This document shows, in pieces, positions 4,789-51,868 of a stretch of 64,000 nucleotides of DNA. The notes under the pieces are model-generated. The model was not told where the DNA came from. It saw nothing but the letters and a program-made list of their open reading frames with translations, and searched no databases. Origin of the DNA: Haliotis cracherodii (taxonomy: Eukaryota); the NCBI RefSeq assembly GCF_022045235.1, contig NW_027266267.1, positions 11,780,001 through 11,844,000 on the forward strand, in the 5' to 3' direction. Every line of letters starts with the position of its first letter. Positions within the stretch are counted from its first letter, which is position 1. A program made the translations under genes and the position numbers.

Positions 4789-7653
4789 TTAAGAACAACT
4801 TGAGTTCTCAAAGGTCGGATTTTCTATTCCGTTAGTGCTTCTGTTGGAACATTGCTCATCATCGGTCACTTTACCTCTAGGACGGCATTTCCTGAAGCAG
4901 AGTAATGAATCGTAATATAATTGTATATTTGTTGGTTAACGACTAACACAGCTACACTCAAACTATGTGACTGTCAGAGAGTCCAGTGATTAACACTATG
5001 AGCGTTTGTTTTACACTGTGGAACGATGACATACAATCAAACCTTATCAGCATGCCTGACCAACCGATCCGTTTAGTTACCTCCACCTGGTCACTCCAGC
5101 GTCAAAACGGTGTAAGAAAAATGTAAATGTTTAACACATGATTACTGACCTTGCTGATATACATTAAATCGTGAAATGTGTGCGAGTACAAATTAATATG
5201 TACAAAATGCGAACGTTACATTTGTAACTGGACATATTGGAGTATACTGTTATTTGCAGGTTCTCTGCAAACTGGCGGGACCAATGATATTTACACATAT
5301 TTACATATATATATACATACTGGTCAAATTAAAAACTTAACATTTTAAAAAGTAATCCCATATATGATATACATCGGACAAATGTATCAGAGAAGGTAAT
5401 TTTTAATCATTAATGTCCAAAGAAAGATTTTAATTAAAGGTGGTAACCATAATTTGTACCAAGCACCTACGGTAATTGGTAATAACATCAACAGTGTAAA
5501 TCATAAGACCAAAGCACGAGAATCTGATAGCACACACGTGTATGGCCACCATGTGCGTTGACAACCGCCACACAACGCCTTCGCAATGACCTTGTGATGC
5601 TTGTAAACACATGATTGGGAAGACGACGCCATTGTTGCTGCAAAATTGTGCCAAGATCTTGCAAATTCTGTGGTTGGTTCTGGAGAGAGCTCAGACTTCT
5701 GCCAAGAGCATCCCAGACGTGTTCGATGGGATTGAAGTCGGGAGACCTTGACGGCCAGTCCATTACGTTGACTCCCGCATTCTGAAGGTAATTCCTTGTC
5801 AAAACTGCTGTGTGGGGTCTGGCATTGTCGTGTTGGAAGATCAAACCATGTCCACGTGCTGCCATAAAAGGCAGAAGTTCTGGTGCCAGTACCTGGTCGC
5901 GGTAAGCAGCAGAGTTGAGGTTGCCATGGATGACAAGAAGCCTGGAACGTGCATTGCTACAGAAAGCACCCCACACCATGACACATCCGCCTCGAAATCT
6001 GTCAATATCCTGTACACAGCATTGGACGTAATGTTCATGAAGGCGCCTCCACACCCTCGCCCTACCATTAGCAAATCGTAAATTAAATCGGGATTCATCA
6101 CTGAAGACGACTTGATTCCAATTCCTCTGAGTCCATCGTAAGTGTCGCTGCGCCCACAAATGACTCTGACGTCTGTGTAATTGAGTCAGAATCGGCCAGC
6201 AGTAGGACCGTCATGCTTGAAGGTGAGCAGTTCTCAGACGGTTTCGAACAGTTTGCGCACTCAGTCTACCCCTAAACATTTCATTTCTGGTTGATGTAGC
6301 CGTCAAAAATCGGTTACGGAGGTGACGTAAGACAATAAGACGCGTCTGTAAATCATAAACAGTCCGTCTACTACAACCCATCGACCTTGCGACGTCAGCT
6401 ACGGATGTTCCCGTCTGCAACATGCCGATGGCACGTTCACGTTGCACATCTGAAAGGCGTGGCGTGACAAATGGCCGTAAAGATTTTTATTTTCTCGTGT
6501 TTTTCTTTTTTTGTTAATGACTGCTAACAAGTAAATGACTGCTGAAAACACGTGCGGTTGCACGTGAAAAAACACTTTTGCCAGTATAGTGCAGTGCACA
6601 TAATTTTGATCGATTCATCTGCACAAAAACACAAGGGCCCACAATGATAACTGGTCAAAATGTTAAAATTTTAGGATTGTGAAGTTTTTAATTTGGTTCA
6701 GTATATTATGCATATATATAACGAAGGTCGTAAGTGGGCTCATCTTGTTTACACACGTTGATCAAGCTGTTATGACATTTACCAACCGTGTATGATGGCG
6801 TCTTTTCAGGCAGTCAAACCACTGCTCATCCAGGTCGCGAACATGTACAGCCTAGCAACAACATTAAACTGTGGTATCTTCCAACAATTTTTAATGGATC
6901 TAGATTCAGCAAATTTTGTTCATTTTCATTCACCAATGGCCAGTCTTGGTAGACGACTATATATCTATGGTCGTGGTAAATCATAAGGTATTTCTCTTTG
7001 ACCATCCTTCTAATAATGGTTCATTAACCAGGGAGACGTTGACCTACACTTTTACTTAACACTGAAAACGTTAAGACTAGATCAGTCTTAAACCACTATA
7101 CACAGAACCCGTCCGGAAAGCGGAAGGCCCGGGGTTCGATGCCCGGCCGCGCCATACCAAAATACGTTAGAAGAAAGTACTTGTCGTTACCCTGTCTGGC
7201 GTTAGGCATTACAGGGCTAGAACAAGGACTGGTCTGCTCGGAGTCGCTCTGCTGTGTCTTAATAGGGTATTCATGTTGAAAGGGGTATGTCGTATAAGTG
7301 GGCAAGCACTATAAAACCGACATTAGTCCGGGCTAGTACAAGCAACCACCCGACCACACATGCATGCACGTCGCAATATAAGGACAATACGTTTGGACGC
7401 GACGTTAAACCCCATTTCACCTCACCTCACCATTGTGCACGATGAGCAGAGTAGCATACACACGCTTAGACTTGTAAATATTATTTAGATTTAAGCAATT
7501 AATTCGTTTGAATATCAGAGACAGACATAGAAGGGACTGAGTGTACGTACATATGCAGATGAAGAAGTATTGCCCCGACGATGATCAACACAATAATTAT
7601 GTTACAAGTCACTGCCCCCGCCACCACTGGAGTTGATGTGTCAGGTGCTGCAC
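4789..7653 (-). CDS. Duplicated TM exon (7653-7551) and cytoplasmic-tail exon (4891-4789) of the SRCR-YWTD receptor; orphan or alternative 3' cassette
   Basis: Both 103-nt exons keep AG/GT sites, phase and frame: [32 protein letters not shown] / [33 protein letters not shown]. Confidence 0.65.
5320..6701 (-). mobile_element. Tc1-family transposon with disrupted DDE transposase
   Basis: ~30-bp imperfect TIRs flanked by TA; motifs FSDESRF, FQHDNARPH, SPDFNPIEHVW; start codon mutated and internal stop at 6211. Confidence 0.92.
7095..7430 (+). mobile_element. SINE family D (MetaSINE-like central domain)
   Basis: B-box GGTTCGATGCC, shared body, (CACCT)n tail; copies 21720-22050, 61420-61530, 63387-63658(-), 63753-63985. 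Superfamily assignment is from recollection only. Confidence 0.65.
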
Positions 7654-12348: not shown

Positions 12349-14800
12349 ATGGGTGTCATACTGTGGGGACATGTGTATGCAGCATTATCAGCACATTTCA
12401 TTTTCTTTGGGGCTTCGGACACCCTCACGAGGTCACCGTTTGGTATCAGGATGTGTCAAAGGCTGTGCTTGAACGTTGTAGGATGTTCCACGTACTTGTA
12501 TTCAAGTACTAAACATCTCTGTCGTCTGAAGGCTTCTGTAGATGACAAACCTTCCCCTGATGAAGTGGCTTATAATGTTAACATCACACAGGTAAGCAAC
12601 AATGTGTATTGTTATACCTCTCTTAAGAATATTTGAATTGCATTGGTTAATCTATCCCATGTGACTCAACAATACATTTCAATGCTGACATAACAATAGA
12701 AAACTGCGCCGAACAGCTTTGGTTAAATCACGATACTGACACTGACCTCAAATATGGACTCATCACGTAATCACTATTGCTCTTCAGTGATCTGAGGTCC
12801 GATCTGACAACCGTAGGGGTCGAGTACTCGGGGAATCATTATTTGCATAACACACTGACATTCTGGGTATTTTCATTTAACAGAAATATCATAGGCTAAT
12901 ATAATATTAAAAAAATATATGCTTATTTGGTATATATGATTTTTTGTCCCGGAAAAGGTAGGTTTTGCCATATATGCACTATATTTTGCGGACCCGTGAC
13001 GATCCGGTGTTGAATTGGTCTTGCACAAATCATGCTTGTTGTAAAATGCGACTATGCTTGTTGTAAGATCCAAGGGGATCTGGTGGTCAGGGTCGCTGCG
13101 TTGATCGATGCTCATGATGTCAATCACTGGGTTGTCTGGGGGAGAGAGAGAGGAGCGGGAGTCGAAACATGATCAAAGGTTTCTTGCGTGTCCAAGGAAC
13201 ACAACTCAGCGAGAAGCAACAAGGATTTTGAGAAAAAAGACACATATCAAAATGAATTTTATCTGTGGTCTCAAGTAAAAAATCCATAGCCGACTCAGAA
13301 CGACATTCTAAATATGGATCCTATGCCTAACAGACAAATACATAATAGTATAACTGTGTTTCACTTATTCTATGTTTAGGACAGAAACACGGGCATGTGT
13401 CCACACTTTGCGAAGGGTTTTTATGATCGAAAACACCACTGGCATTGTGAGACAATTCAAAAGGAAGGTAAACACTGTAGTTTGATAAACCCTTTAAATT
13501 CGGTCAGAAAACAATAAAGCATTTCGAACTTACATGCTAATAACAAAATTGCCAAACATGTTATCAACTAGATTACCAGGCAACTCTTCCATTTTTACAG
13601 CCGAATCACTGGCCATGTTAACATATATAGCATATATAATTTTGATTTAATTCTTGTTTTTCGAAAAGGAATTGATTGATATGTTTTGTATAAAATAAAG
13701 TACTTTTTGGTAATTGGTACAGTAAATGGGATAACTGAGAATTTTAATGGCTGTACCCGCGAAAGCGGTGTACAATGATTGTCCTTCGGAGAGGCGATGT
13801 AAGACCACATCATTCAAGAATGAAGAATATGTGCTATTATTAGTGTTTGGCGAAATCTGTCAATACTCGCCAACACCTGAAGGGCTGATGTAGATCCTTA
13901 ACATAGATATTAATGTATAATGTTTTCCAGTCACGATATGGATGCAATGTTGCCGATGTTACTATAATCGTTTACTCACACTCCAGACACATATCATGGT
14001 CTGCAAACATTTTATCATTCTGTTTTTCAGTTGATGCAATCAATGGAAAGCCGGAACTCTTCAACAATAAGACAAGACTTTTAGTTTATACAAAGCAAAA
14101 AATTGTTCAGGTTAATTTTCAAAACATGTCGGTTCGGAAGGAACCTTATCTGACCATACGGTTAATGGACGCCATGGCATATAATTCTCGTCTAAAAACA
14201 GTTCTTGTTGCAAAACAACATCAGATCCTATCATATCCTTTAGACATGGATGTTGGTACCGTTTTATTGACAGGAATTAACATCAGGGGGCTGACGGTAG
14301 ATGAAGGTAGACAGCTGATATTTGCTTCAACTCGAAATCGTACAGTGGTCGTGATGACAACAAAGGGCAAACAATTCCATGTTATTCTGCATAGGCAGCA
14401 TTTTAAACGGTTTCCTAGTTCCATAGCGGTAGATCCTGAGAGGAAAATGATGTATGTAAATTGTCAAAAGTATATTGTTTTCAGTACATATAGAGCAGAA
14501 AATGTGACAAAGTTGAAAGCTAAAAGTGTAGTTTTTTCTTTAAGCTACGACAACAAGAGACACGTCGTATACGCCCTAGACGGTCAGTCGGTCATGCGGA
14601 TTTCCAATTCGCTAAAATATGAAACAGTTATCAAGTTATCAAATCGACCATGCAGTGTGTCGTATCACAGTGACAGAATCTATGTAATCGGCGTTTCGGG
14701 TACGGATGTGTATGCCATGAAAGGAGAGGAAGTTTATCCTTATAAAAATATATCAATGGAACTTCGTTGTAGACGTTTAGTCGTTTGCTTGGTGTGGTAA
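12349..14800 (+). CDS. Probable secreted PAN/apple-domain + YWTD-like beta-propeller protein (~366 aa)
   Basis: Exons 12349-12591, 13380-13467, 14031-14800; GT-AG introns in phases 0 and 1 join in frame. PAN pattern CQRLC..GCSTYLYSSTKHLCRL; propeller blades (AMAYNSRLKTVLV, GLTVDEGRQLIF, SIAVDPERKMMY, SLSYDNKRHVVY). Start codon less certain. Confidence 0.78.
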
Positions 14801-15239: not shown

Positions 15240-16898
15240 TATACTCTGCAAAAAAGAAACACAACTAGGAAGTCGTAAATATCTGACAGAGCGTTGTCGA
15301 TAGCCATACACAATTAAAAACAGAAAAATTCAGCATGATTATGATTAATGTTTGTTGAGAATGAGAATGAGGTAGTGCAGAAAGTTGGTGAAAAGAAGAA
15401 AAAAAAACAACCATGTGAGAGCCTGGCACCCAAACACACTAACATGACATGCACGTGCAACATCACTGTTTGGGCTATAAAAACTTTGTGTTTACATTTG
15501 CATACCATCACAATCTTACAACAAGTGAACAGCGAAAACATGCCATGCCTGACGGAAGCCCAACGCATCAACGCAATACAGGTAAATGATATTCGGCCGT
15601 AGCCAGGTTTTTCAAAGAACCATTACAAGACTGTGAGATCGTTATCAGACACACGGGACAATCTGTGACATTCACAGATCCGGTCAACCACGTATCACTG
15701 CCATGGCACAGGACAGATTCATATGGCTACATAACTCATCTGAACAAAACACGTCGTCCATTTCTACAGATATAACCATACCAGGATTGTATAGGATATC
15801 AGCACAGATAGTGAGGAACCGTTTACGCGCAAAAGGTATTCGCTTTAGATGGCCATTTCGAAGTGTCATTTTTACGGACCTGCAACGTCGGCTGCGAAGT
15901 TGATGGGTTCAGGGCAACATGGTATGGCCACAGCAGCGAAGAAGGCAAGTTTGGTTTTGCGGTGAGTCATGATTTATACTTCGTCCTGTTTATAGACATC
16001 GAAGGGAACGTTATGCATGAAACTGCATAAAGGAAGTGGACAGATGTTTGGGTGTCAGCGTGATGATGTTGACAGCCATCTCCCACACTGGCAGAACAGA
16101 CTTGGTGCAAATTCTGGGGAACAATTACAATTCTCCTTCCCCTCATGCAACAAGCAAATGATGTTTTCCAACTCTAATGGCACGCCTGAACTCTGATGGC
16201 ACGACAACAGCCTTTTTAATGAACCACAATATCCATGTGCTGCCATGGCCCTCCGGGTTTGTTTGTTTGTTTGTTTGTTTGTTTGTTTAGCAATAATCGA
16301 ACTATACGAAGGCGGTCTGTAAATAATCGAGTCCGGACCAGACCATTCAATTATTGATGTCATCAGCATCTATCCGCGCAATTGAGATACGATGACATGC
16401 ATCAGCCAAGTCAGAGAGCCTGACCACCTGATCACATTAGTCACCTTTTATGACAATCATAGTTGCCTTTTACGGCAAGCGTGGTTTGCTGAAGACCGGG
16501 CCTCCAGATTTAAACCAAATCAAACATTTATGGGATGAACTTGGTCAACGTTTGAGACTACGTCAGCAACAACCACAGAACACACGCAGTTGCCGTTGCC
16601 GCAACAACTGCAGGAAGCATGGGTGAACATTCCCCAGGCTACAATCCACAGTCTGATTGTTTTTGTGGGATGACGATGCTTGTCAGTTTGGGAATCGAGT
16701 TGTGGCCATACAAGATATTGAGCACACATCACATTCATCTTGAAAATCTACTGTCCTACGAGTGCCACATAGAACCTTGGTCAATGAAAATGGAGTGTGC
16801 CAATTTCGAACAATCGATTACCATCTGTTCATTATTTATGTTATATAAATTAAACATGGAAAAATCATTTGTGCGGTGTTTGGGGGGGCAGAGTATAT
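15240..16898 (+). mobile_element. Decayed Tc1-like transposon (duplicate of 776-2568)
   Basis: Fragments such as ISAQIVRNRLRAKGIR; TA-flanked degenerate TIRs. Confidence 0.7.
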
Positions 16899-41700: not shown

Positions 41701-42704
41701 GAAGACTCTCATCTCATACTCCGTGCAGTTCCGGGGAAGAATAGGTCTTCAGCAACCTACGCTTGCTGTATAAAGCGACTCTGCTTGTCGTAAGAGGCGA
41801 CTAAAGGGATCGTGTTGTCAGGCTTGCTGACTTGGTTGATGCATGTCATTGATCCCAATTGCGTGGATCGATACTCATGGTGTCAATCACTGGATTGTCT
41901 GGTCCAGACTCGATTATTCACAGAGCGCCGTCACATAGTTGAACTATTGTAGAAACTTCCTATTTGTGTCGGTGAATATCAAAAGTCGCTTTTAACAGTA
42001 TTCCAGTTATATCGCGGCGTGTCAGCTTAATGTGGGAGGAAAGCCCGAAGTGATGCAGGTCTCAGACGTTTACCACTTCGGTGAAACCCACGAGCACGGG
42101 TATGGTGCTGACAAACCTAGAAACATAATCGGGGCGAACCGGGATTCGAACCCACAATCATTGGTTTCTGGCGTGTCCAAGGGACGCAACTCTGCACAGC
42201 GAATCGCGGCGCCTTAGACGACTGGGCCAGCCCTGCCCCCTTGTTTTATATTAAGACACACAGTGATAAATATTGATCTACGCATATAGTTGGAGTCATA
42301 TAAACTGTGGCTGAAATTGGAACCATCATAATCATGATTTACGACAAAATGGCAGTTTCCTTATTTCGACACACACAGAAATCAGCACACAAATAACCAG
42401 ACAGGAAACTTTGCATTTTAAGAGACAGATATTATACAGGAAAAACAAAACATGTTTACTCGTTGTCTTAGTATTGTTTATTTGTACAGAGGCATATACC
42501 GTCCCGCAATTGTGAGGATGACCAGATTGATCTCAATTCGTTTCTGTTGACGTAAATGCTACAAGGTTTAAATGAAATGTTTTCAATTAAGAACATATCC
42601 CTTCACAAGTTAAAACGAAGTAATGTTGACATTAGCAACCAACTGAGTCCTCAAATGTTTGGGTCAGACAACATAAGATGACTAATCTACAACAGTCGTG
42701 ACTG

Positions 42705-44005
42705 TGGTATGGCTACAGGTGGTATGCGTGCAGGTGGTATGCGTGCAGGTGTTATGGGTGCAGGTGATGTAATTGCAGGTGGTATGAATAATGCAAGTGG
42801 TATGAGCAGTTGGTATGGGTGTAGTTGGTGTGAGTGCAGTGGTATGGGTACAGGTGATATGAGCGGAGGTGGTATGGGTGCAGATGGTTTGAGTGCAGTG
42901 GTATGGGTACAGGTGGTATGAGCGGAGGTGGTATGGGTGCAGATGGTGTGAGTGCAGTGGTATGGGTACAGGTGGTATGAGCGGAGGTGGTATGGGTGCA
43001 GGTGGTGTGAGTGCAGTGGTATGGGTACAGGTGGTATGAGCGGAGGTGGTATGGGTGCAGGTGGTGTGAGTGCAGTGGTATGGGTACAGGTGGTATGAGC
43101 GGAGGTGGTATGGGTGCAGGTGGTGTGAGTGCAGTGGTATGGGTACAGGTGGTATGAGCGGAGGTGGTATGGGTGCAGGTGGTGTGAGTGCAGTGGTATG
43201 GGTACAGGTGGTATGAGCGGAGGTGGTATGGGTGCAGGTGGTGTGAGTGCAGTGGTATGGGTACAGGTGGTATGAGCGGAGGTGGTATGGGTGCAGGTGG
43301 TGTGAGTGCAGTGGTATGGGTACAGGTGGTATGAGCGGAGGTGGTATGGGTGCAGGTGGTGTGAGTGCAGTGGTATGGGTACAGGTGGTATGAGCGGAGG
43401 TGGTATGGGTGCAGGTGGTGTGAGTGCAGTGGTATGGGTACAGGTGGTATGAGCGGAGGTGGTATGGGTGCAGATGGTGTGAGTGCAGTGGTATGGGTGC
43501 AGGTGATATGAGCAGTTGGTATTCATGCAGGTGGTATGGGTACATGTGGCGTAGGTGCAGGTAGTATGGCTGCAGGTGGTATGAGTGCATCTGGTATGAG
43601 TGCAGATGGTATTGGCGCAGGTGGTGTAGGTGTAGGTAGTATGGCTGCAGGTGGTATGAGCTGGTGGAATGGGTGCAGGTGGTGTGAGTGCAGGTGGTGT
43701 TGTTGGAGTGGTGCAGGTGGAGATAGTGTTTTGGGTGCATGTGGTGTAGGTGCAGGTGGCATGGGTGCAGGTTGTGTCAGTGCAGGTGGTGTGAGTGCAT
43801 GTAGTGTGGGTGCAGGTGGCGTGAGTGCAGGTGGTATGGATGCAGGTGATATAAGTGCAGGTGATATTGGTGGTGTGATGTAGGTGCAGGTGTTGAAGGT
43901 GCAGGTGGTATGAGTGCAGGTGGTATGATTGCATCTGGTATGGGTGCAGGTGGTATGGGTGCTGGTGATATGAGCAGTTGGTATGAGTGCAGGTGGTGTA
44001 GGTGC
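42705..44005. repeat. G-rich 15-bp minisatellite containing a 59-bp higher-order repeat
   Basis: Unit gcaggtggtatgggt; near-perfect 59-bp period over ~42832-43500 (~11 copies). Confidence 0.95.
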
Positions 44006-44009
44006 AGAA

Positions 44010-44425
44010 AAAGAATTTTGTATTTATCATTTTCCATGACGTCCTCTACATATTCCGGGTCGTACCATGGGTGGACCTCTGTGTCAAAACCACAAGCATG
44101 GCGAAGACGGTAATAAAATGATCGAGCTACACCATCATGTCGTTTAAGATACTGTGTTGAGCCAAAGCTGGGCATCCACTCACAATGTGTTGGACAGTCT
44201 TATTATATTCATTACATAATCTACATTCCATATTTACATTTTGATGCAAAATCACACATTGACGGTTTCCAGTTGGAAGTGACTGGTCCTGAGCAGCAAT
44301 CAGAAAGCCTTCTGTTCACTTTTGGGGCCAGACGACTTCATCCAAGCGAAGGACTCCGAGGATTGCTGATCTTCTCAACACACTGCACATAAACTCGATG
44401 CAGTGGTCGTTCAGATAGCCTCTAT
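44010..44425 (-). pseudogene. RLE-type non-LTR retrotransposon fragment (R4/Dong-like)
   Basis: EGFLIAAQDQSL, CRLC..HIVSGC zinc knuckle and YLKRHD motifs, with frameshifts. Confidence 0.75.
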
Positions 44426-45828
44426 GAGTAGTAGTAGTAGTAGTAGTATCATTATTATTATTATTATTATTATTATTGTTATCATTAATCATAAAGAGGT
44501 GTCAAATTGAAACTGCTGTACATTTGTAGTTTGCTCTTTGTTTCAATCTAGACACGGATCGAGTTCATAGTTTGGATGAGCATGTCGTTGTTTCGCTCAC
44601 TCGGATGGATCGTAGTGAGGATATTCTTAAACGGTCATGCAGTTAAACTCCCCAACTTATCCCAATATACATGTATATGCTAAAGAAAACTAACTTTAAG
44701 ATTAAATCGTCTAAATAATCAGAAAGAACGCTTCTATATTTATTCATATTATGGAATTCCCAGAGGTTTCCCCAGCAATGTGAAAGTAGCCGTCAGTGTT
44801 TTCGTCATTTCAAGAATGCAGTTTCGTGAAAAACGCGTGAAGCCAAATGTGTCGATCATAAACATATTAACGCCAGTTTCGCGGTCATGTAAACATCACA
44901 TTACAAATTTATATTCATTAAATCAGATACGCTCTTCGTATTTTTCTTCAAAAGTCTTGAAGGTGTCCACAATTTGAAGTTGCAAAGTCAAGTTGACTGC
45001 CAATACATTGCACTCATGTACGTGTAGTGATAACTAAATCCAGAGATGTTTATGTCATGGCTAAGGTGATAGTAAGATCTCTAAAATGTAGCAAAAAAAA
45101 CGCAAAACGTACAGGTATATGTTTCCACCGGCTGTCCTTATGGTTGGACTTGGACATCTGCGTAACTTTAGGGTATAATTTATGAGGAAAACGTGTTTAC
45201 AGATCCCATTGATGCGAGCGACGATCATGGTGGTATAACATGACATAAACTTGATCTTCAGTTCATCTAATCATCATCCGTGATGAAAAGTTTGATATAT
45301 CAGGAAATATTACGAACAAAAAAATGAAACGAACATTTTAGAAACAAAATGTTTATTATGAAACAATCACATTGATAAGAACACGTAGTCACTTCATGAT
45401 TATATCAGTAATACAGTCAGCAAGAGCCAAGTAGTTTATAGTATAAAGTAAATAGGATTTAGCATTCCCAATTGCATTACTGAGCATGAAAAGGTCATAT
45501 ATTAGTTGCAAAAATATGGAAAAGAACTTAAATGGTAAAATGGTACAAATTATTCCAATGCGTAGGTTTTCATACAGCAGTTAAAATAAATACACATGAA
45601 TAAAACAAGGTACTTGACATCAGTGTTCCCATGTGTGTCACCTTGTATTTTGTATGAACTGATGACTGATTTGTTCTTCATGAAATAATGATTGTACTTA
45701 TTTCAAAAACGTCAAATTAAGCGTTTTGAAATAGCAAATTTGCAAAATATGTTGAAATATATCAAGGATCTATTGATACTCGTATTCTCATTATTGTGGA
45801 GGTACCCGGGTATTCACCGACATGTTAT

Positions 45829-48800
45829 TCAATGCAACTCGCTATCAGATGGATTGTGATCTTGATTCAAAGTAGTATATTCATCATTCTGTGCTTGTCT
45901 TCTAAGATATTCATATTCGTTTCTGGTAACGCAGTCAGCTGCATGCTTTCCCTCAGTCGAGTATAACAGCAAACTATCTGATTCATTAATCACTTGATTC
46001 AATAACACTAAAACGGTATCTGATGATGTGGTAGGAAATGGCATAACCTGCCTTTGATCAAGTATGTCCGTCTGAAGTTCGTCTGTTTGATTAACAGTTG
46101 AACGTGTTTCAGGGACAGTTGTGTTAAAAGCATCAGCTATTGTCAACGGGAAGCTTATTTGACCCGCAGCAAAATCTGAAACTGACTCTTCACAGCATTC
46201 ATCTTCTTCCTCATCTCCAAAACTTGTGCTTCCCTTTTCTTTTTCTGTTTCATCTTCCTTGATTGCTAATTCATCCAGACTTTCTAAATCGACGTTTTTT
46301 AACTCCAGACTGAGAGGCAAAATTCTAACCTCCTGATAATCAACGTCACTTCCTACTGACCTATGTCCAGGGACAGCGATTGAGGCTGACAAATGTGAAT
46401 CCTCTATCACATCATATCCTCGATCTGTCATGTTCTCCAGTGACACACTTATATTGTTTGTTGGTGTCGTAAATGACTGCGGAAACCTGTCAATATATAA
46501 GGCATGCCGTTGTTAACAACACGTAATGCATAATAGTTGCAAGGAACTCGTTTGATATGCGTACATCAATAATCAAATACAATATTTATATACATACGAA
46601 TACATGATATACTACTATGTTCGAGGTCTGAACGCCCGTATGAAGTTAAGGTTATAATCAAGGCATGGGAGAAATTAACTACGAATTAATTATAGCCTGG
46701 TCATCTGCGTCTGCCAGTGACATGATCAGTATGAAACTTTATAGCCTACCTTATATTCCAGTAATCTGTAATAAAACAAGGCAAAACGTAAGGTACATGT
46801 CTGTCTCTAAACCATATAACAAAACTGAAATCGCTTTTACATGAATCCAATGGTTAATGTCTCAGAAATATATATTATTTATGATTTCATCTCACCTCTG
46901 ATATGCTCAACTCGGAAGAGAAAAACAGTAGCAATGCTGATCAAGGCGATAGCTACTATGGAACATCCAATGATAATGGAACTGGTAGAAGAACCTGCAT
47001 TTTCTGAAAAGGGTGTAAAAATGTCTTTCACGGCTAATGCATAGTCTCTATGCCACACGTGTAAAAATGAGCATTTTTTACAACAATTTATGTCAACACG
47101 TCCGATCAATGAAATGAGTTACTACACAAACGTGAGATCAATTTTTCACAATGAATCATTATTCTGTTGTCTTCATATTGCTCACATTTGCATTTAACCG
47201 TTAAGGAAGACGCATACATCGTGTCGCATTCGGAAACGAACAATTATTTGTTCACCTCAGTCTTGTGGCTCATTCATTTTATCACATTTCTTGATGGGAT
47301 TGTCTTCTTCGCTTAAGTCCGTCCTTTACAGTGATAAAATGACCAAAACCTGACAGAAAAGACATGCATTTTTTGTAAACAAAATAAATATATACCTTCG
47401 GGACGTGAAGCGATGATGATAACGTCGATCGTTGCTTCGTCACATTCAAAACTAAAAATATATGCTCCAAAGTCGCTTTCGGTGATGTTGGTAATTGTGA
47501 GTGTAAAGTCATATACGTTATTTGTTGATGGTTTGGTTGACAACTTATACTTTTCACTTGCAGTGATGTCTCTTGGATTTCCATATTTTGCAAAGTACCA
47601 TTTTGTCACTACAGGTTCTGGGTAGGCACAAATGGTGAACTTGACTTTTCCAGAAGGGGGTTTGCCATCAGTTTCATTTTCAATTTCACAATCCTTTGAA
47701 TCTCGTTTCCTTGGCAGAGCTGAAATGTTCAAAACATATGTGTTCTAATGTTCCATACTAATAATACTTTATTTTAAGATTTTGTTTTAACGTGACAGAA
47801 AGAAATCTTAATTGTAAGATTTTGACTTAACGTGACACAAAGATTTTTTTTTACAATGTACATGAAAACTGAATGAAAACCAAAAACAGACCTATGAATG
47901 TACGCCCACTGCTGTAGTCATTAAGAGTTCCTTTTTACGGAAATTAACCTTAGGGAAATGATTGTCAGATGACCAAAAGTGAATGTTTGTGTCTTTCGAG
48001 AAAGTATTTGAAACAAACACAATAATCGTATTTACTTTGCAGAGTAGCCACGTGTGCATTTTCTTCAGATGTACCCATACTGTTGTTGGCTCTACAAAAG
48101 TACTGTCCAAACTGAGAACAGCTTCTGATATGTATCACATGATCAAATACATGTTCTTGTCTTCTGAGCATGCCGACTGAAGACTTGTTGCTCCCAACTT
48201 GAACAACATGCACATGTGGATGTGGGTAACCATCAACCACACACGTGAACTTGGCAGTTTGATTTACACTGAATGTTATCATGAATGTCCCGTTTACAGT
48301 CAGATTCATTATCTCAGGTTTCACTGTAGGAAGAAAACAAAAACAAAGAGACAATGATGGAAACCTTGTCCGACATTCCATGATAATAATTACATGTACG
48401 GAAGTACTTAGACAGAATATTACTGAAAACGATATTTATTCATTCTTTATATTCGGCATACACACATTGCAGTAAGTTTATGACCTTTCAAGATATTTTC
48501 CATACGTATTTCAACCACCTTCCTAAGCATCAAAATGTTACTACCGTGCTCTATAAAGATCTTTGGGCTTTTACCAGACACGGTGTGTATTCACAAACAA
48601 CAGGAACATATTATATATACATCAAAATTATGTAATGTTTATTATTAGTTAAAACGTTCTTAATTGCTGTTCTGTCTGTTTACAGGTGATATTTTGTTTA
48701 CTCAGAGCCAAACAAATAATTGTGTGGTAAGGTAGTCAAGCTAACCTCGTCTTGTATCACTACTGACCATATGATCGTGAAAATCATAGTGTATCATTTT

Positions 48801-50064
48801 GTAAGGAAAAGAAAAGCATTTAAACATATGTTTCCCAATGATGTAGTTAGTTGTATTTACAATTTTGCTATAAATCACGAGACAAACTCATATTGGCAGA
48901 TGTAAATTACAAGAATGTGAAGACATGCGATGCAGGGAATAACGTACGTACATGGCCATTCCATCACACTAAGGAAAAGAAAAGCATTTAAACATATGTT
49001 TCCAAATGATGTAGTTAGTTGTATTTACAATTTTGCTTTAAATCACAAGACAAACTCATATTGGCAGATGTAAAATACAAGAATGTGAAGACACGCGATG
49101 CAGGGAATGACGTACGTACGTGGCCATTCCATCACACTATTATTACTCCATTCCGACTTGAGTCCCTTTTCCTCCGTAGCCTGACATGAATAGTTACCCA
49201 TGTCCTGTCTCTTGAAGCCATTGATTGTCAAGTTAGACCCTACCATCTGATGCCTTCCTCCACTCAGCATCCGGGTGCTGCCTCTTCTCCAGATGTAGGA
49301 CATAGTCAGATTGTGGTCCCTGGGAAGATTCCGTGACGTTGAGGAACATATCAGGGTAACATTCTGACCGACTTGTGGCTTGATAGAGGTAGTGATTTTT
49401 GGTTTTGTAGGTACACCTATATCAACATGATTGACATTATAAATGTTTACTTTCTCATAATAGCAAATATGCATTCATGTTTGTTTCTTTTGCATATCAA
49501 TGTAAATGTGTTTATGATATCACATAGCTGTATTGACGATAATTACAAAACTTTATTTTGCTTTGTCTATGATGGTCTATGATAAAAACATGTAGTTCGC
49601 CCATCAAAATACTTTTCTCTTAATTAGTCTTCTTCGTACTTACGTGCGACAACTAAGACGTGCTCGCAAGTGGTACCCTCACAGAAGTACCTGCCAGCAT
49701 CTGCTACTGTAACGTCGTACAATAGAAACCGAATGACATTCGCCGCAGATGAAGTTATTACTTCGGTGATTATGATTCGTAGCCAGTAGAAATACTCTAC
49801 GTAAATTGCATTAGACTCCAGTCTAAAAATGTACCTGCCAGAGTCTGACTTTACATGATATAAATGTCCATACTGAGGTACTCTCCAGGTTACCGTCGCA
49901 TTGTCACCCACACATAGCACTGTGTAGTTAGTGTCCCCATCTGCGCGATCTGTTGTAGACAAATAATACACATGTATTTATCACCTAATGACATTTACTT
50001 CGTCTTGTGACATCAATGATAATAAAGGTAGTCGGGTCAAGCAAGCAGGTCTCAGACATGTTAC

Positions 50065-50113
<49 letters not shown>

Positions 50114-51868
50114 CACATGTATTTACATGTAGTTACACTGAAGAGCTGTCATGAGACAGCGAAAGTACTATGTCTGAAACTGATATAAGGAAGATGATGG
50201 GCTAACGTGGACTTATTTTATTATATATTACATGTACACCGAGTGAACATTTACCTCATTTTTGTATATATATATTTGTCTATTCGTTAGGTATAAATGC
50301 GTGTAGGTATAAGTATAACTCACATTCCCCATCCAGGACATGACCCAAGCTCCAGTCGGATCGAAACAGATGTTTCAGCACCTCAACCTGACAAGCGTAC
50401 GTGGCATTATCTTCGCTCTTGTCTTTACTGATAGTCAAGGTATTGGTGTAGGATATGGCATAATACGAAAACCACCCATAATCTACGGAAACCTGATATT
50501 TCCCGTCAATAGTCAGTTTGATGCCATTTCTTCTCCAGGTGACTGATACATGTAGATGAGAAACTGGGGATGATCTGATGATGGAGTAACATGTCAGATT
50601 GGCCGTGTCCCTAGGCTGAGCTGTATCCTGTGTCACTATGTAGGGAGCTTGGATATCTGAAAGTATACATTACCCTGTAATATTTAAGTTTCCTATCACC
50701 CCACCATGTAATTCGAACACTTCACTGTTTTGTGAGAAATAAATATTCTGTAGGTGATGAAGAAAACACTTGATTCTTAATTATATGATTAATGACTGTT
50801 ATGCCGATAAGTTGTGATAAGTCTATCACTCACAAATATTACCAATATTTATATGCAGATATGGGGTTAAAAAGTAGCACAAGGGTAATACCTCTTTTAC
50901 CCTAGATTTTACCCTTCTTGTTAGTTTACTCGGTTGATACTCACGTATTACAACAAGCCTCTGACCACACTCAGCAATAATCGTCCCCCTGGAACCAGGT
51001 GAACCGCTGTAACATGAATAATTGCCATCGGCTGACCAAATCCCTGCATCAAACAGTTGGAAACTGAACACTCCTGATCCTGAAGCACTTATGTTTCCTC
51101 TGAATATTGTCCTCAATGTGTATTCATCATTGACTTTCACTTTGTTATAGTCCGTAACGTGAAAAAGATAGTCGGATGAATGTCTCACTGTGAATTCCCT
51201 TATTTCTGGTTTGGGCAAGTTCCACGACAGCGTGGCTGTACGTCCATGCTGAACAAACACAGTTGTCTGGGCTGAAATACAATTACGTCTATTTCGTGAC
51301 AATTGTCTGCTCGTGTTTCATAACCCTCGATTTTACCTCTCAGGTGTCAGTTTTACCAACATTCATATTACCATACCAAAAATGTATATGTGCTGACTGA
51401 TCCGACTTTCAATACACAGGCACATGGGAATATTGTCGAAATATACCTTTAAGGGTATTTTCTAATCCTTTCATTTGATAAACAAGTAAAATGTTTCCGT
51501 AACGAATTGCCTCGATCCATAAGGAATGTATTGTAATCACAAATTATAGGTTTGCGATTTGGAACAATGTTTAGAGACATCTTATCTTAGTATCACAACC
51601 TACGGAAAAAGAAACAGTCTGTTTGCCAGAAATGTTTATAAAACCAAGCGTGTATTTGAAATGATAACAAAACCTCTGGTATAATTTCCTTCTTAGAAAT
51701 CATGTAATGTGTACACGTAATTGCAGTTGAATCGAGATGCGAGGTAAAAAAAGGATCTGAGATTAAAAAAAGCAGCAGTACTTTGTTACCTTTATCTTGG
51801 CAAACTCCTCTTATGCAGCAGCATACAGTGACAAGAAGTCCATAACTAAATGCCAAGGTCATCTTCAT
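45829..51868 (-). CDS. IgSF type-I receptor, V-C-V-C-C-Ig-TM with tyrosine-motif cytoplasmic tail (~911 aa)
   Basis: Exons 51868-51790 (SP), 51271-50945, 50656-50324, 49949-49644, 49416-49120, 48323-48036, 47719-47396 (one Ig domain each, phase 1-1), 47003-46896 (TM), 46765-46750 (16-nt microexon), 46486-45829 (tail); DxGxYxC motifs. Confidence 0.88.

What the first reader, a model, noticed from the sequence alone, without database searches (positions are those of the whole stretch)
45829..46486. Invertebrate six-Ig receptor whose tail has both ITIM-like and ITAM-like motifs
Seen: the acidic ~220-aa tail contains GYDVI, VDYQEV and YEYL-RRQAQNDE-YTTL. Known: VDYQEV fits the ITIM consensus [ILVS]xYxx[LV], and YxxL-x8-YxxL fits ITAM spacing. 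Inference: a V-domain immune or allorecognition receptor able to recruit both SHP-type phosphatases and Syk/Shark kinases, comparable to Hydractinia Alr or vertebrate paired receptors, here in an apparent mollusc.
Basis: partly seen in the sequence, partly recalled or inferred. Interest (0 to 1): 0.8.

Follow-up and report, generated by a model that had tools for sequence, protein, structure and literature searches.

The report
Abalone six-Ig receptor, tyrosine-motif tail
A transcribed black-abalone gene encodes a cell-surface receptor with six immunoglobulin-type domains and a floppy tail carrying docking motifs like those of vertebrate immune receptors; it is a new member of a kind already described in oysters, and its immune role is untested.

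Summary
Spliced transcript contigs from three public runs confirm every junction laid; the signal-to-Ig1 junction lay outside the stretch.

The tail contains GYDVI, VDYQEV and YEYL-x8-YTTL. It is predicted disordered and has no relatives outside close abalone kin.

In shuffles of the tail, the ITIM-like match arises by chance 32% of the time and the ITAM-like match 0.7%.

Same-chromosome paralogs give partial conservation:
- Y[DA]VIED and the microexon tyrosine are family-wide.
- The ITIM-like site recurs in five short-tailed paralogs.
- The ITAM-like pair recurs, aligned and with the same spacing, in one long-tailed paralog and is lost in two.

Ig1 folds as a V-set domain. An SHP-2 gene is present; Syk was not located.

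The gene is not an ortholog of a known adhesion molecule. I found no evidence that it is a paired or allorecognition receptor.

The best reading is a phosphotyrosine signalling receptor working like human FCRL3 or oyster CgIgR. It is a new member of a known kind. The scan has already noted similar Ig-receptor clusters elsewhere in this genome.

The parts
51790..51868 (-). Exon 1: start codon (ATG at 51866-51868; a second ATG at 51860-51862) and signal peptide. The donor leaves 1 base of a codon.
   Evidence: Hydrophobic leader followed by a strong GT donor. The junction to Ig1 lay outside the stretch laid, but contig X5-17 runs 317 nt past the Ig1 acceptor.
50945..51271 (-). Exon 2: Ig1, a V-set-like domain lacking the B-strand cysteine. 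Cysteines at positions 86 and 101 are conserved in paralogs.
   Evidence: No Pfam hit. AlphaFold model pLDDT 82. The best Foldseek matches are antibody VH/VHH, CD8, pIgR D2 and nectin D1. Alignment A2. Joint 50656/50945 seen in X1 and X5.
50324..50656 (-). Exon 3: Ig2, with the canonical Cys pair.
   Evidence: Pfam C1-set, ig and I-set at or near their cut-offs. Joints 49949/50324 and 50656/50945. It is the most divergent exon between contigs, at 3.6-4.2%.
49644..49949 (-). Exon 4: Ig3, a weak Ig-like match with the canonical Cys pair.
   Evidence: Pfam Ig_2 at E 0.047 only. No match to solved structures by sequence. Phase-1 borders. Joints confirmed.
49120..49416 (-). Exon 5: Ig4, I-set type.
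   Evidence: Pfam Ig_3 42.7 bits. Local similarity to contactin-2 Ig1 over 47 residues. Joints confirmed.
48036..48323 (-). Exon 6: Ig5, I-set type.
   Evidence: Pfam I-set 31.6 bits. Best solved relatives are Dscam Ig8 and titin. Joints confirmed.
47396..47719 (-). Exon 7: Ig6, a weak V/I-like match.
   Evidence: Pfam V-set at E 0.0011, below the cut-off. Joints 47003/47396 and 47719/48036.
46896..47003 (-). Exon 8: stalk and a single uncharged transmembrane helix, followed by basic residues.
   Evidence: a 28-residue uncharged run (small polar and apolar residues) containing a hydrophobic core of about 20 residues, then R-V-E-H-I-R. Joints confirmed.
46750..46765 (-). Exon 9: a 16-nt microexon that moves the frame from phase 1 to phase 2 and adds a juxtamembrane tyrosine (Y-W-N-I).
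   Evidence: Fourteen letters lie between 46488 and 46896 in the X1 and X6 contigs. AG/GT borders, and a conserved counterpart in two paralog lineages. Skipping it would give a stop after 13 codons, at 46449-46451.
45829..46486 (-). Exon 10: 218-aa acidic, disordered cytoplasmic tail plus the stop codon. This is the stretch of the finding.
   Evidence: AlphaFold mean pLDDT 35.7. No Pfam, PDB or distant protein relatives.
46405..46419 (-). GYDVI, part of the family-wide block [GE]Y[DA]VIED.
   Evidence: Conserved in paralogs L026 (twice), L011 and L003-L007. An allele reads GYAVI.
46327..46344 (-). VDYQEV, an ITIM-consensus site within the block DY[QE]EVRxLP.
   Evidence: Aligned to SDYEEV in five short-tailed paralogs. 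The tyrosine is replaced by Cys in L026 and L011.
45967..45984 (-). ESDSLL, which matches the acidic dileucine sorting consensus [DE]xxxL[LI].
   Evidence: Read from the translation. The consensus comes from general knowledge and was not tested.
45868..45915 (-). YEYL-x8-YTTL, an ITAM-consensus pair near the C-terminus.
   Evidence: It aligns with YEGL-x8-YEVL at the C-terminus of paralog L026 and is degenerate in L011 and L012. It is the only part of the tail with pLDDT above 50, modelled as a helix.
45420..45828 (-). 3' untranslated region (approximate end), with a polyadenylation signal at about 45357.
   Evidence: Contig X1-1 extends 280 nt beyond 45700. AATAAA/ATTAAA scan.

Best explanation
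The stretch is the tail exon of an intact, transcribed black-abalone gene for a type I membrane receptor. The protein has a signal peptide, six Ig-like domains (the first a V-set fold), an uncharged transmembrane helix and a disordered acidic cytoplasmic region of about 230 residues that carries seven tyrosines. It belongs to a large family of Ig receptor genes clustered on the same chromosome.

Most likely it is a phosphotyrosine signalling receptor. In this reading, ligand binding clusters the receptor and Src-type kinases phosphorylate the tail tyrosines. The C-terminal YxxL-x8-YxxL pair then docks a tandem-SH2 kinase of the Syk type. The VDYQEV site docks an SH2 phosphatase (SHP-2 or SHIP) or a Src-family SH2 domain. 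One chain would therefore carry both an activating and a damping module, as in human FCRL3.

Shown here: the gene structure, its transcription, the topology elements, the V-set fold, tail disorder, the presence of the motifs and their partial conservation in paralogs, and an SHP-2 gene in the genome. Inferred: phosphorylation, the binding partners, the ligand, the cell type and any immune role.
For: - Splice junctions from Ig1 through to the tail are seen in spliced contigs of three runs from three studies, while a DNA run gives unspliced contigs.
- All Ig exons have phase-1 borders, the hallmark of IgSF exons.
- Signal peptide and uncharged transmembrane helix.
- Ig1 folds as a V-set domain.
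- The tail is disordered, as expected for a string of short docking motifs.
- The ITAM-like match is expected in only 0.7% of shuffles.
- It aligns with an equally spaced YxxL-x8-YxxL at the C-terminus of a paralog whose tail is only 24% identical.
- The ITIM-like site lies in a conserved block shared with five short-tailed paralogs.
- Y[DA]VIED and the microexon tyrosine are conserved across three paralog lineages.
- All tail tyrosines are unchanged in three allelic or sister-species versions, although 10 of 12 base differences in the tail change an amino acid.
- The SHP-2 ortholog's N-SH2, C-SH2 and phosphatase exons lie at C15:9.89-9.908 Mb.
- An oyster five-Ig receptor with an ITAM of the same 8-residue spacing binds oyster Syk experimentally (PMC6994640).
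Against: - The ITIM consensus is loose, with a 32% chance match.
- Its tyrosine is lost in two paralogs, and the ITAM-like pair is lost in two others, so neither motif is a family invariant.
- Between close abalone versions the tail changes at about the same rate as the introns (about 2%), with a neutral-looking share of amino-acid changes (P = 0.51). The unchanged tyrosines at this depth therefore prove little.
- No Syk or Shark gene was located in this genome, because the search was cut short.
- No tissue or challenge data are available. Three runs labelled as the window's own species hold almost none of the gene.
- The same tyrosines also fit YxxPhi sorting signals.
Confidence: 0.55

Rival explanations
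1. The tail is mainly a trafficking signal. The tyrosines act unphosphorylated as YxxPhi motifs for clathrin adaptor complexes. Together with the acidic dileucine ESDSLL and the acidic cluster, they drive endocytosis or phagosome and lysosome sorting of a binding or scavenger-type Ig receptor.
For: Four of six tail tyrosines are YxxPhi (3% of shuffles reach this). ESDSLL matches [DE]xxxL[LI], and an EEEDECCEES cluster is present. The tail is disordered.
Against: Sorting signals do not need a paired YxxL-x8-YxxL with fixed spacing kept in a 24%-identical paralog. They also do not need the extended conserved blocks around Y24 and Y50. The two roles are not exclusive.
Confidence: 0.2
2. It is a cell-adhesion or cell-contact Ig molecule whose ITIM-like and ITAM-like matches are chance or lineage noise. 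The conserved tyrosine blocks would serve other adaptors (Src-family, Nck or Grb2-type) or none.
For: Ig4 and Ig5 resemble I-set domains of contactin, Dscam and titin. The ITIM consensus is common by chance. The motifs are lost in some paralogs. DY[QE]EV is close to the Src-family SH2 optimum, and the microexon tyrosine is followed by x-N, the Grb2 type (both from general knowledge).
Against: There are no FN3 exons and no GPI signal, and the domains show no collinear similarity to any adhesion molecule. The N-terminal domain is V-set. The family is massively expanded and clustered, which is typical of immune-type receptors. The ITAM-like pair is positionally conserved.
Confidence: 0.15
3. It is a young, drifting member of an expanding family with little or no function of its own. 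It is transcribed but under relaxed constraint.
For: Exon divergence between abalone versions is about equal to intron divergence, and the mix of amino-acid changes in the tail looks neutral. The neighbourhood is rich in transposons and partial cassettes.
Against: All ten exons are open with canonical splice sites. Indels between versions are in frame (12 nt).
Confidence: 0.08

Closest known systems
Human FCRL3 (Fc receptor-like 3) and FCRL2/5
   Same: Type I membrane protein with six Ig-like domains, an uncharged transmembrane segment, and one ITAM-like plus one ITIM-like sequence in the same tail. [quoted passage not shown] It is a member of a clustered multigene family.
   Different: No detectable sequence relationship. 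The abalone tail is much longer, acidic, and an orphan outside close abalone kin. The V-set first domain lacks the canonical disulfide. Binding partners are untested.
Oyster CgIgR (Crassostrea gigas)
   Same: Mollusc receptor with five Ig domains, a transmembrane segment and a C-terminal-region ITAM with an 8-residue spacer. It binds CgSyk and drives ERK signalling and phagocytosis (PMC6994640). The spacer of paralog L026 shares a G-Q-C triplet with the published CgIgR motif.
   Different: Six Ig domains here rather than five, plus an additional ITIM-like site and the YDVIED block. The tail search against 1.84 billion representatives found no oyster protein.
Oyster CgNCAM1
   Same: Mollusc Ig receptor whose tail ITIMs bind an SH2 phosphatase (SHIP2) and damp inflammation (PMC11841013).
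   Different: CgNCAM1 has three Ig domains plus an FN3 domain and groups with NCAM. The abalone gene has no FN3 and no NCAM-like collinearity.
Hydractinia Alr family
   Same: An invertebrate, chromosome-clustered family of unusual V-set/I-set Ig receptors. The tails are too diverse to align, and some carry ITAMs or ITIMs (10.1101/2022.03.04.482883).
   Different: Alr proteins carry an Fn3-like fold and are allodeterminants of a colonial animal with extreme polymorphism. Here the V exon is nearly invariant between contigs, and abalones are solitary.
CEACAM1 long/short tail switch
   Same: In CEACAM1, a small exon whose inclusion sets the frame decides whether a long ITIM-bearing tail or a short tail is made (PMC4113144, title and abstract). 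Here the conserved 16-nt microexon has the same frame-setting position.
   Different: Only the microexon-included form was seen in the contigs. A switch is an idea, not an observation.

Membership tests
ITAM-bearing immunoreceptor (functional class) | YxxL/I-x6-8(-12)-YxxL/I in the cytoplasmic part of a membrane protein | tested here: met
   YEYL-x8-YTTL at 45868-45915, downstream of the transmembrane exon in RNA-confirmed splicing. The chance match is 0.7%.
ITAM-bearing immunoreceptor (functional class) | Motif conserved among homologs | tested here: inconclusive
   Kept in three close abalone versions. It is kept at the aligned position in paralog L026 and lost in L011 and L012. No distant orthologs were available.
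ITAM-bearing immunoreceptor (functional class) | Both tyrosines phosphorylated and bound by the tandem SH2 domains of Syk, ZAP-70 or Shark | not testable with these tools
   Needs biochemistry.
ITIM-bearing inhibitory receptor | [ILVS]xYxx[ILV] in the cytoplasmic tail | tested here: met
   VDYQEV at 46327-46344. However, 32% of shuffled tails also match.
ITIM-bearing inhibitory receptor | Motif conserved among homologs | tested here: inconclusive
   SDYEEV is at the aligned site in five near-identical short-tailed paralogs. The tyrosine is replaced by Cys in L026 and L011.
ITIM-bearing inhibitory receptor | Recruits SHP-1/2 or SHIP when phosphorylated | not testable with these tools
   An SHP-2 ortholog exists at C15:9.89-9.908 Mb. 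Binding is untested.
Paired activating/inhibitory receptors (KIR/LILR type) | Near-identical ectodomains combined with opposite tails | tested here: not met
   The best Ig1 paralogs are 59-63% identical. The ITIM-only short-tailed paralogs lie in the C4:12.1-12.3 Mb cluster, where Ig1 exons are about 51-53% identical.
Paired activating/inhibitory receptors (KIR/LILR type) | Activating partner with a charged transmembrane residue that borrows an ITAM adaptor | tested here: not met
   The transmembrane segment of this gene is uncharged. Paralog transmembrane segments were not surveyed.
Contactin / NCAM / L1-type adhesion molecules | Ig domains followed by FN3 domains (or a GPI anchor), with collinear similarity | tested here: not met
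   RNA contigs join Ig6 directly to the transmembrane exon. There are no FN3 hits. Only Ig4 resembles contactin Ig1, over 47 residues. The other exons hit other proteins or nothing.
Hydractinia Alr allorecognition proteins | Highly polymorphic N-terminal V-like domain; Fn3-like fold | tested here: not met
   Ig1 differs at 2 of 329 bases from the X5 contig. There is no further fold between Ig6 and the membrane. Only a few individuals were sampled.
IgSF V-set domain | V-type beta sandwich | tested here: met
   Model pLDDT 82 and pTM 0.73, with nine strands plus a short helix. The top 50 Foldseek hits are V domains. The Pfam V-set sequence model does not match, and the B-strand cysteine is absent.

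The most novel reading that the evidence does not exclude
The gene may be one element of an independently evolved gastropod counterpart of the vertebrate leukocyte-receptor and FCRL complexes. In this reading, about a hundred V-type Ig exons lie on one chromosome. Family members have shuffled tail modules: ITAM plus ITIM here, an ITAM-like pair in L026, ITIM-only short tails in five copies, and motif-less tails. All share a 16-nt frame-setting microexon that could switch a receptor between a signalling tail and an 18-residue stub.
Probability: 0.2. Interest if true: 0.7.

Novelty: new member of a known kind. Interest (0 to 1): 0.4.

Why it matters
ITAM- and ITIM-based signalling was long thought to belong to vertebrate immune receptors. 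Oysters and Hydractinia have shown it is older. This gene adds a gastropod example with both modules on one chain, inside a very large lineage-specific Ig receptor family. The host species, the black abalone, is critically endangered, largely because of the bacterial disease withering syndrome (PMC9709981). A catalogue of candidate haemocyte receptors with a testable signalling logic could therefore serve resistance studies. The conserved microexon offers a simple, testable idea for how such receptors might be switched off. None of this is established without expression and binding data.

Tried and rejected
- I stopped that step and ran the shuffle test on the tail exon read from the window file alone.
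- **Tail searches.** The tail gave nothing in Pfam or in PDB sequences. Two protein searches gave only one 93-96% identical ORF, P0001.
- **Ig1 word search.** It found only a 99% identical fragment, P0002. Its length window hides full-length kin, so this says nothing about distribution.
- **Closest Ig1 relatives.** I looked at two of them (C4:39.48 and 39.73 Mb) hoping to see their tails. No further Ig, transmembrane or tail exons were recognisable within 9 kb, so that cluster stays unresolved.
- **Search for Syk.**
  - The tandem-SH2 locus at C1:59.02 Mb is Csk-like.
  - The one at C15:9.9 Mb is SHP-2.
  - The one at C2:35.9 Mb is PLC-gamma-like.
- **Readings rejected.**
  - Contactin ortholog: only one domain matches, and there is no FN3.
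  - Strict paired receptor: the ectodomains are too different and the transmembrane segment is uncharged.
  - Allorecognition determinant: the V exon is nearly invariant.
Full report
**What is there**

The finding's stretch (window 45829-46486) lies on the minus strand. Translating it gives one open exon of 218 codons plus a stop. Their coordinates are 46405-46419, 46327-46344 and 45868-45915. The exon is strongly acidic, with 45 D/E against 13 K/R, and has six tyrosines.

**Gene model**

Stop-to-stop frames upstream on the same strand show a leader exon, six Ig-sized exons and a transmembrane exon. Splice-site reading places the coding exons as follows:
- signal peptide: 51790-51868
- Ig1: 50945-51271
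- Ig2: 50324-50656
- Ig3: 49644-49949
- Ig4: 49120-49416
- Ig5: 48036-48323
- Ig6: 47396-47719
- transmembrane: 46896-47003

All of these have phase-1 borders, the usual mark of Ig-superfamily exons. The tail exon's acceptor is phase 2, so it cannot follow the transmembrane exon directly.

Laying public contigs on 45700-51699 settled this. Runs X1, X5 and X6 come from three studies and three organism labels. Between them they give spliced contigs with every predicted joint from Ig1 to the tail. Run X15 gives unspliced genomic contigs.

Between the transmembrane exon and the tail exon, X1 and X6 carry 14 extra letters. These resolve to a 16-nt microexon at 46750-46765 with AG and GT borders. 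It moves the frame from phase 1 to phase 2 and adds a juxtamembrane tyrosine (Y-W-N-I).

If the microexon were skipped, a stop would follow after 13 codons, at 46449-46451. No skipped form was seen.

The signal-to-Ig1 joint lay outside the stretch laid.

**Protein features**

- The leader is a typical signal peptide. The transmembrane exon encodes a hydrophobic core of about 20 residues, within a 28-residue uncharged run, followed by basic residues.
- Pfam recognises Ig2, Ig4 and Ig5. Ig3 and Ig6 match only weakly. Ig1 and the tail do not match at all.
- Ig1 was modelled with eight paralog sequences (alignment A2). It folds with pLDDT 82 into a nine-stranded sandwich. Its best structural matches are antibody VH/VHH, CD8, pIgR and nectin V domains. 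It lacks the B-strand cysteine and keeps two cysteines in the F and G region.
- The tail was modelled with its paralogs and is disordered, with mean pLDDT 35.7. The only part above 50 is a helix over the ITAM-like stretch.

**Is it an adhesion-molecule ortholog?**

No.
- RNA contigs join Ig6 directly to the transmembrane exon, and there is no FN3 domain.
- Against solved structures, Ig4 resembles contactin-2 Ig1 over 47 residues.
- Ig5 resembles Dscam and titin I-set domains.
- Ig2 and Ig6 match antibody light chains only weakly.
- Ig1 and Ig3 match no Ig protein.
- The matches are not collinear with any one protein.

**Organism**

The assembly has 1,182,234,246 bases in 80 pieces, and its contig C1 is 89,134,964 bases long. 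The published black abalone (Haliotis cracherodii) assembly has a largest scaffold of exactly 89,134,964 bp and a total of 1.18 Gb (PMC9709981). Earlier notes of this scan use the same name.

**Chance**

In 200,000 shuffles of the tail:
- an ITIM-consensus match appears in 32%
- a YxxL/I-x6-8-YxxL/I match appears in 0.7%
- both appear in 0.4%

The ITIM-like match alone means little. The ITAM-like match is uncommon, but the scan reads many tails.

**Relatives of the tail**

A full HMMER pass over 1.84 billion representative proteins found one hit, P0001. It is a 202-aa ORF from a public transcript assembly, 96% identical. The word-based search found the same protein only. P0001 keeps all the motifs. 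It has an in-frame four-residue insertion, also seen in run X5, and gains a Y-N-P-S.

The contigs of X1 and X15 differ from the window at 12 coding positions of the tail exon, all listed. Ten of these change an amino acid, and none touches a tyrosine or a +3 position. One turns GYDVI into GYAVI.

This shallow conservation is weak evidence:
- the share of amino-acid changes is what random mutation gives (expected 79%, P = 0.51)
- the tail differs by about 2%, like the introns

**Paralogs**

Paralogs are more telling. Searching the abalone genome with the tail found relatives only on the same chromosome, at 10.07 and 12.10-12.32 Mb. Alignment A1 and the translations show four things:

1. The start of the tail (R-F-x-Q-S..T-P-T-x-N) and the block [GE]Y[DA]VIED are kept in nearly all paralogs.
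2. VDYQEV aligns with SDYEEV, followed by R-x-L-P, in five near-identical paralogs whose tails stop about 20 residues later. In L026 and L011 the tyrosine is a cysteine.
3. The C-terminal YEYL-x8-YTTL aligns with YEGL-x8-YEVL at the very end of L026, whose tail is only 24% identical. In L011 and L012 the same stretch has lost the tyrosines.
4. The 16-nt microexon, with its tyrosine, is present with good splice sites in L026 and in the short-tailed type.

The tyrosine modules are therefore old within this subfamily and are kept or lost module by module. That fits function better than chance, but neither the ITIM-like nor the ITAM-like motif is invariant.

**Family size**

The Ig1-type exon has at least 98 matches. 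Nearly all are on chromosome piece C4, in clusters at 5.9, 10.0, 11.8, 12.1-12.3, 18.4-18.5, 23.1-23.7 and 39.3-41.3 Mb. The best are 59-63% identical. The scan has already described a roughly 55-gene Ig receptor cluster with tyrosine tails 5.6 Mb away (s1-834033). That tail type was not hit by my tail search, so this gene carries a different tail.

**Partners**

An SHP-2 ortholog is present at C15:9.89-9.908 Mb, with recognisable N-SH2, C-SH2 and phosphatase exons. Other tandem-SH2 loci turned out to be Csk-like (C1:59.02 Mb) and PLC-gamma-like (C2:35.9 Mb). Oysters do have a Syk that binds an ITAM-bearing Ig receptor (PMC6994640).

**How it most likely works**

It is most likely a single-chain receptor whose disordered tail is a row of phosphotyrosine docking sites. 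The C-terminal pair fits a tandem-SH2 kinase. The VDYQEV site fits SHP-2 or SHIP, or a Src-family SH2 domain, since DY[QE]EV is close to that optimum (general knowledge). The uncharged membrane segment argues that it signals through its own tail and not through a borrowed adaptor.

The closest functional analogue is human FCRL3. [quoted passage not shown] The closest mollusc analogue is oyster CgIgR.

The main rival is a trafficking role. Four of the six tyrosines are YxxPhi, and the tail also holds an acidic dileucine (ESDSLL) and an acidic cluster. The two roles can coexist.

The comparisons with paired receptors and with allorecognition are not supported:
- no near-identical ectodomain with an opposite tail was found
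- the transmembrane segment is uncharged
- the V exon is almost invariant between contigs (2 of 329 bases)

**Verdict**

The gene is real and the motifs are real. They are partly conserved, and their function is unproven. This is a new, lineage-specific member of a known kind, the Ig-superfamily receptors with ITAM and ITIM type tails. That kind is already documented in oysters and in Hydractinia, and this scan has noted it repeatedly elsewhere in this genome.

Noticed in passing
window 61526-63030 (minus strand): A second Ig1-like plus Ig2-like exon pair lies about 10 kb upstream of the gene, with no later exons of its own in the window. Its Ig1 is 51% identical to the gene's Ig1. Another such Ig1 lies just beyond the window, at C4:11854593. 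Transposons and minisatellites fill the gap.
   Followed up: partly
L022:2-1105 (G000:C4:12090001-12091104, minus strand): A paralog gene at C4:12.09 Mb runs into a 368-codon open frame that continues beyond the locus edge. The frame is built from a 17-residue acidic tandem repeat. Five of the 18 repeats counted carry a tyrosine (D-L-Y-E-D-I) where the others have V-D-E-D-I, which may amount to an array of YxxI sites.
   Followed up: no
L023 and L024 (G000:C4:39478000-39487999 and 39728500-39738499): The closest Ig1 relatives (60-63% identical, in the cluster at 39.3-41.3 Mb) show no further Ig, transmembrane or tail exon within about 9 kb downstream. They may be single-V genes or have very long introns.
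   Followed up: partly
L029-L030 (G000:C1:59018000-59037999): A Csk-like tyrosine kinase gene has two consecutive SH2-coding exons 3.8 kb apart, where one would be expected. These could be a tandem SH2 or mutually exclusive exons.
   Followed up: no
window 42690-44200 and 56168-57166: Long coding-looking minisatellites (His/Pro/Thr/Tyr-rich in one frame, Gly/Ala/Met-rich on the other strand) flank the gene on both sides.
   Followed up: no
window 5491-6486 and 57485-59737: Tc1/mariner-type transposase open frames, one of 240 and one of 226 codons, with adjacent helix-turn-helix parts.
   Followed up: no
window 13907-14797 and 3-329: A 297-codon single-exon open frame is duplicated about 14 kb apart, together with its downstream flank (853-1158 against 15317-15622). 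Its nature was not examined.
   Followed up: no
window 50100-50299: An AT-rich simple repeat in the Ig2-Ig3 intron attracts very high contig depth in all runs (up to 38,000 in X15). It is a common repeat and not a feature of the gene.
   Followed up: no
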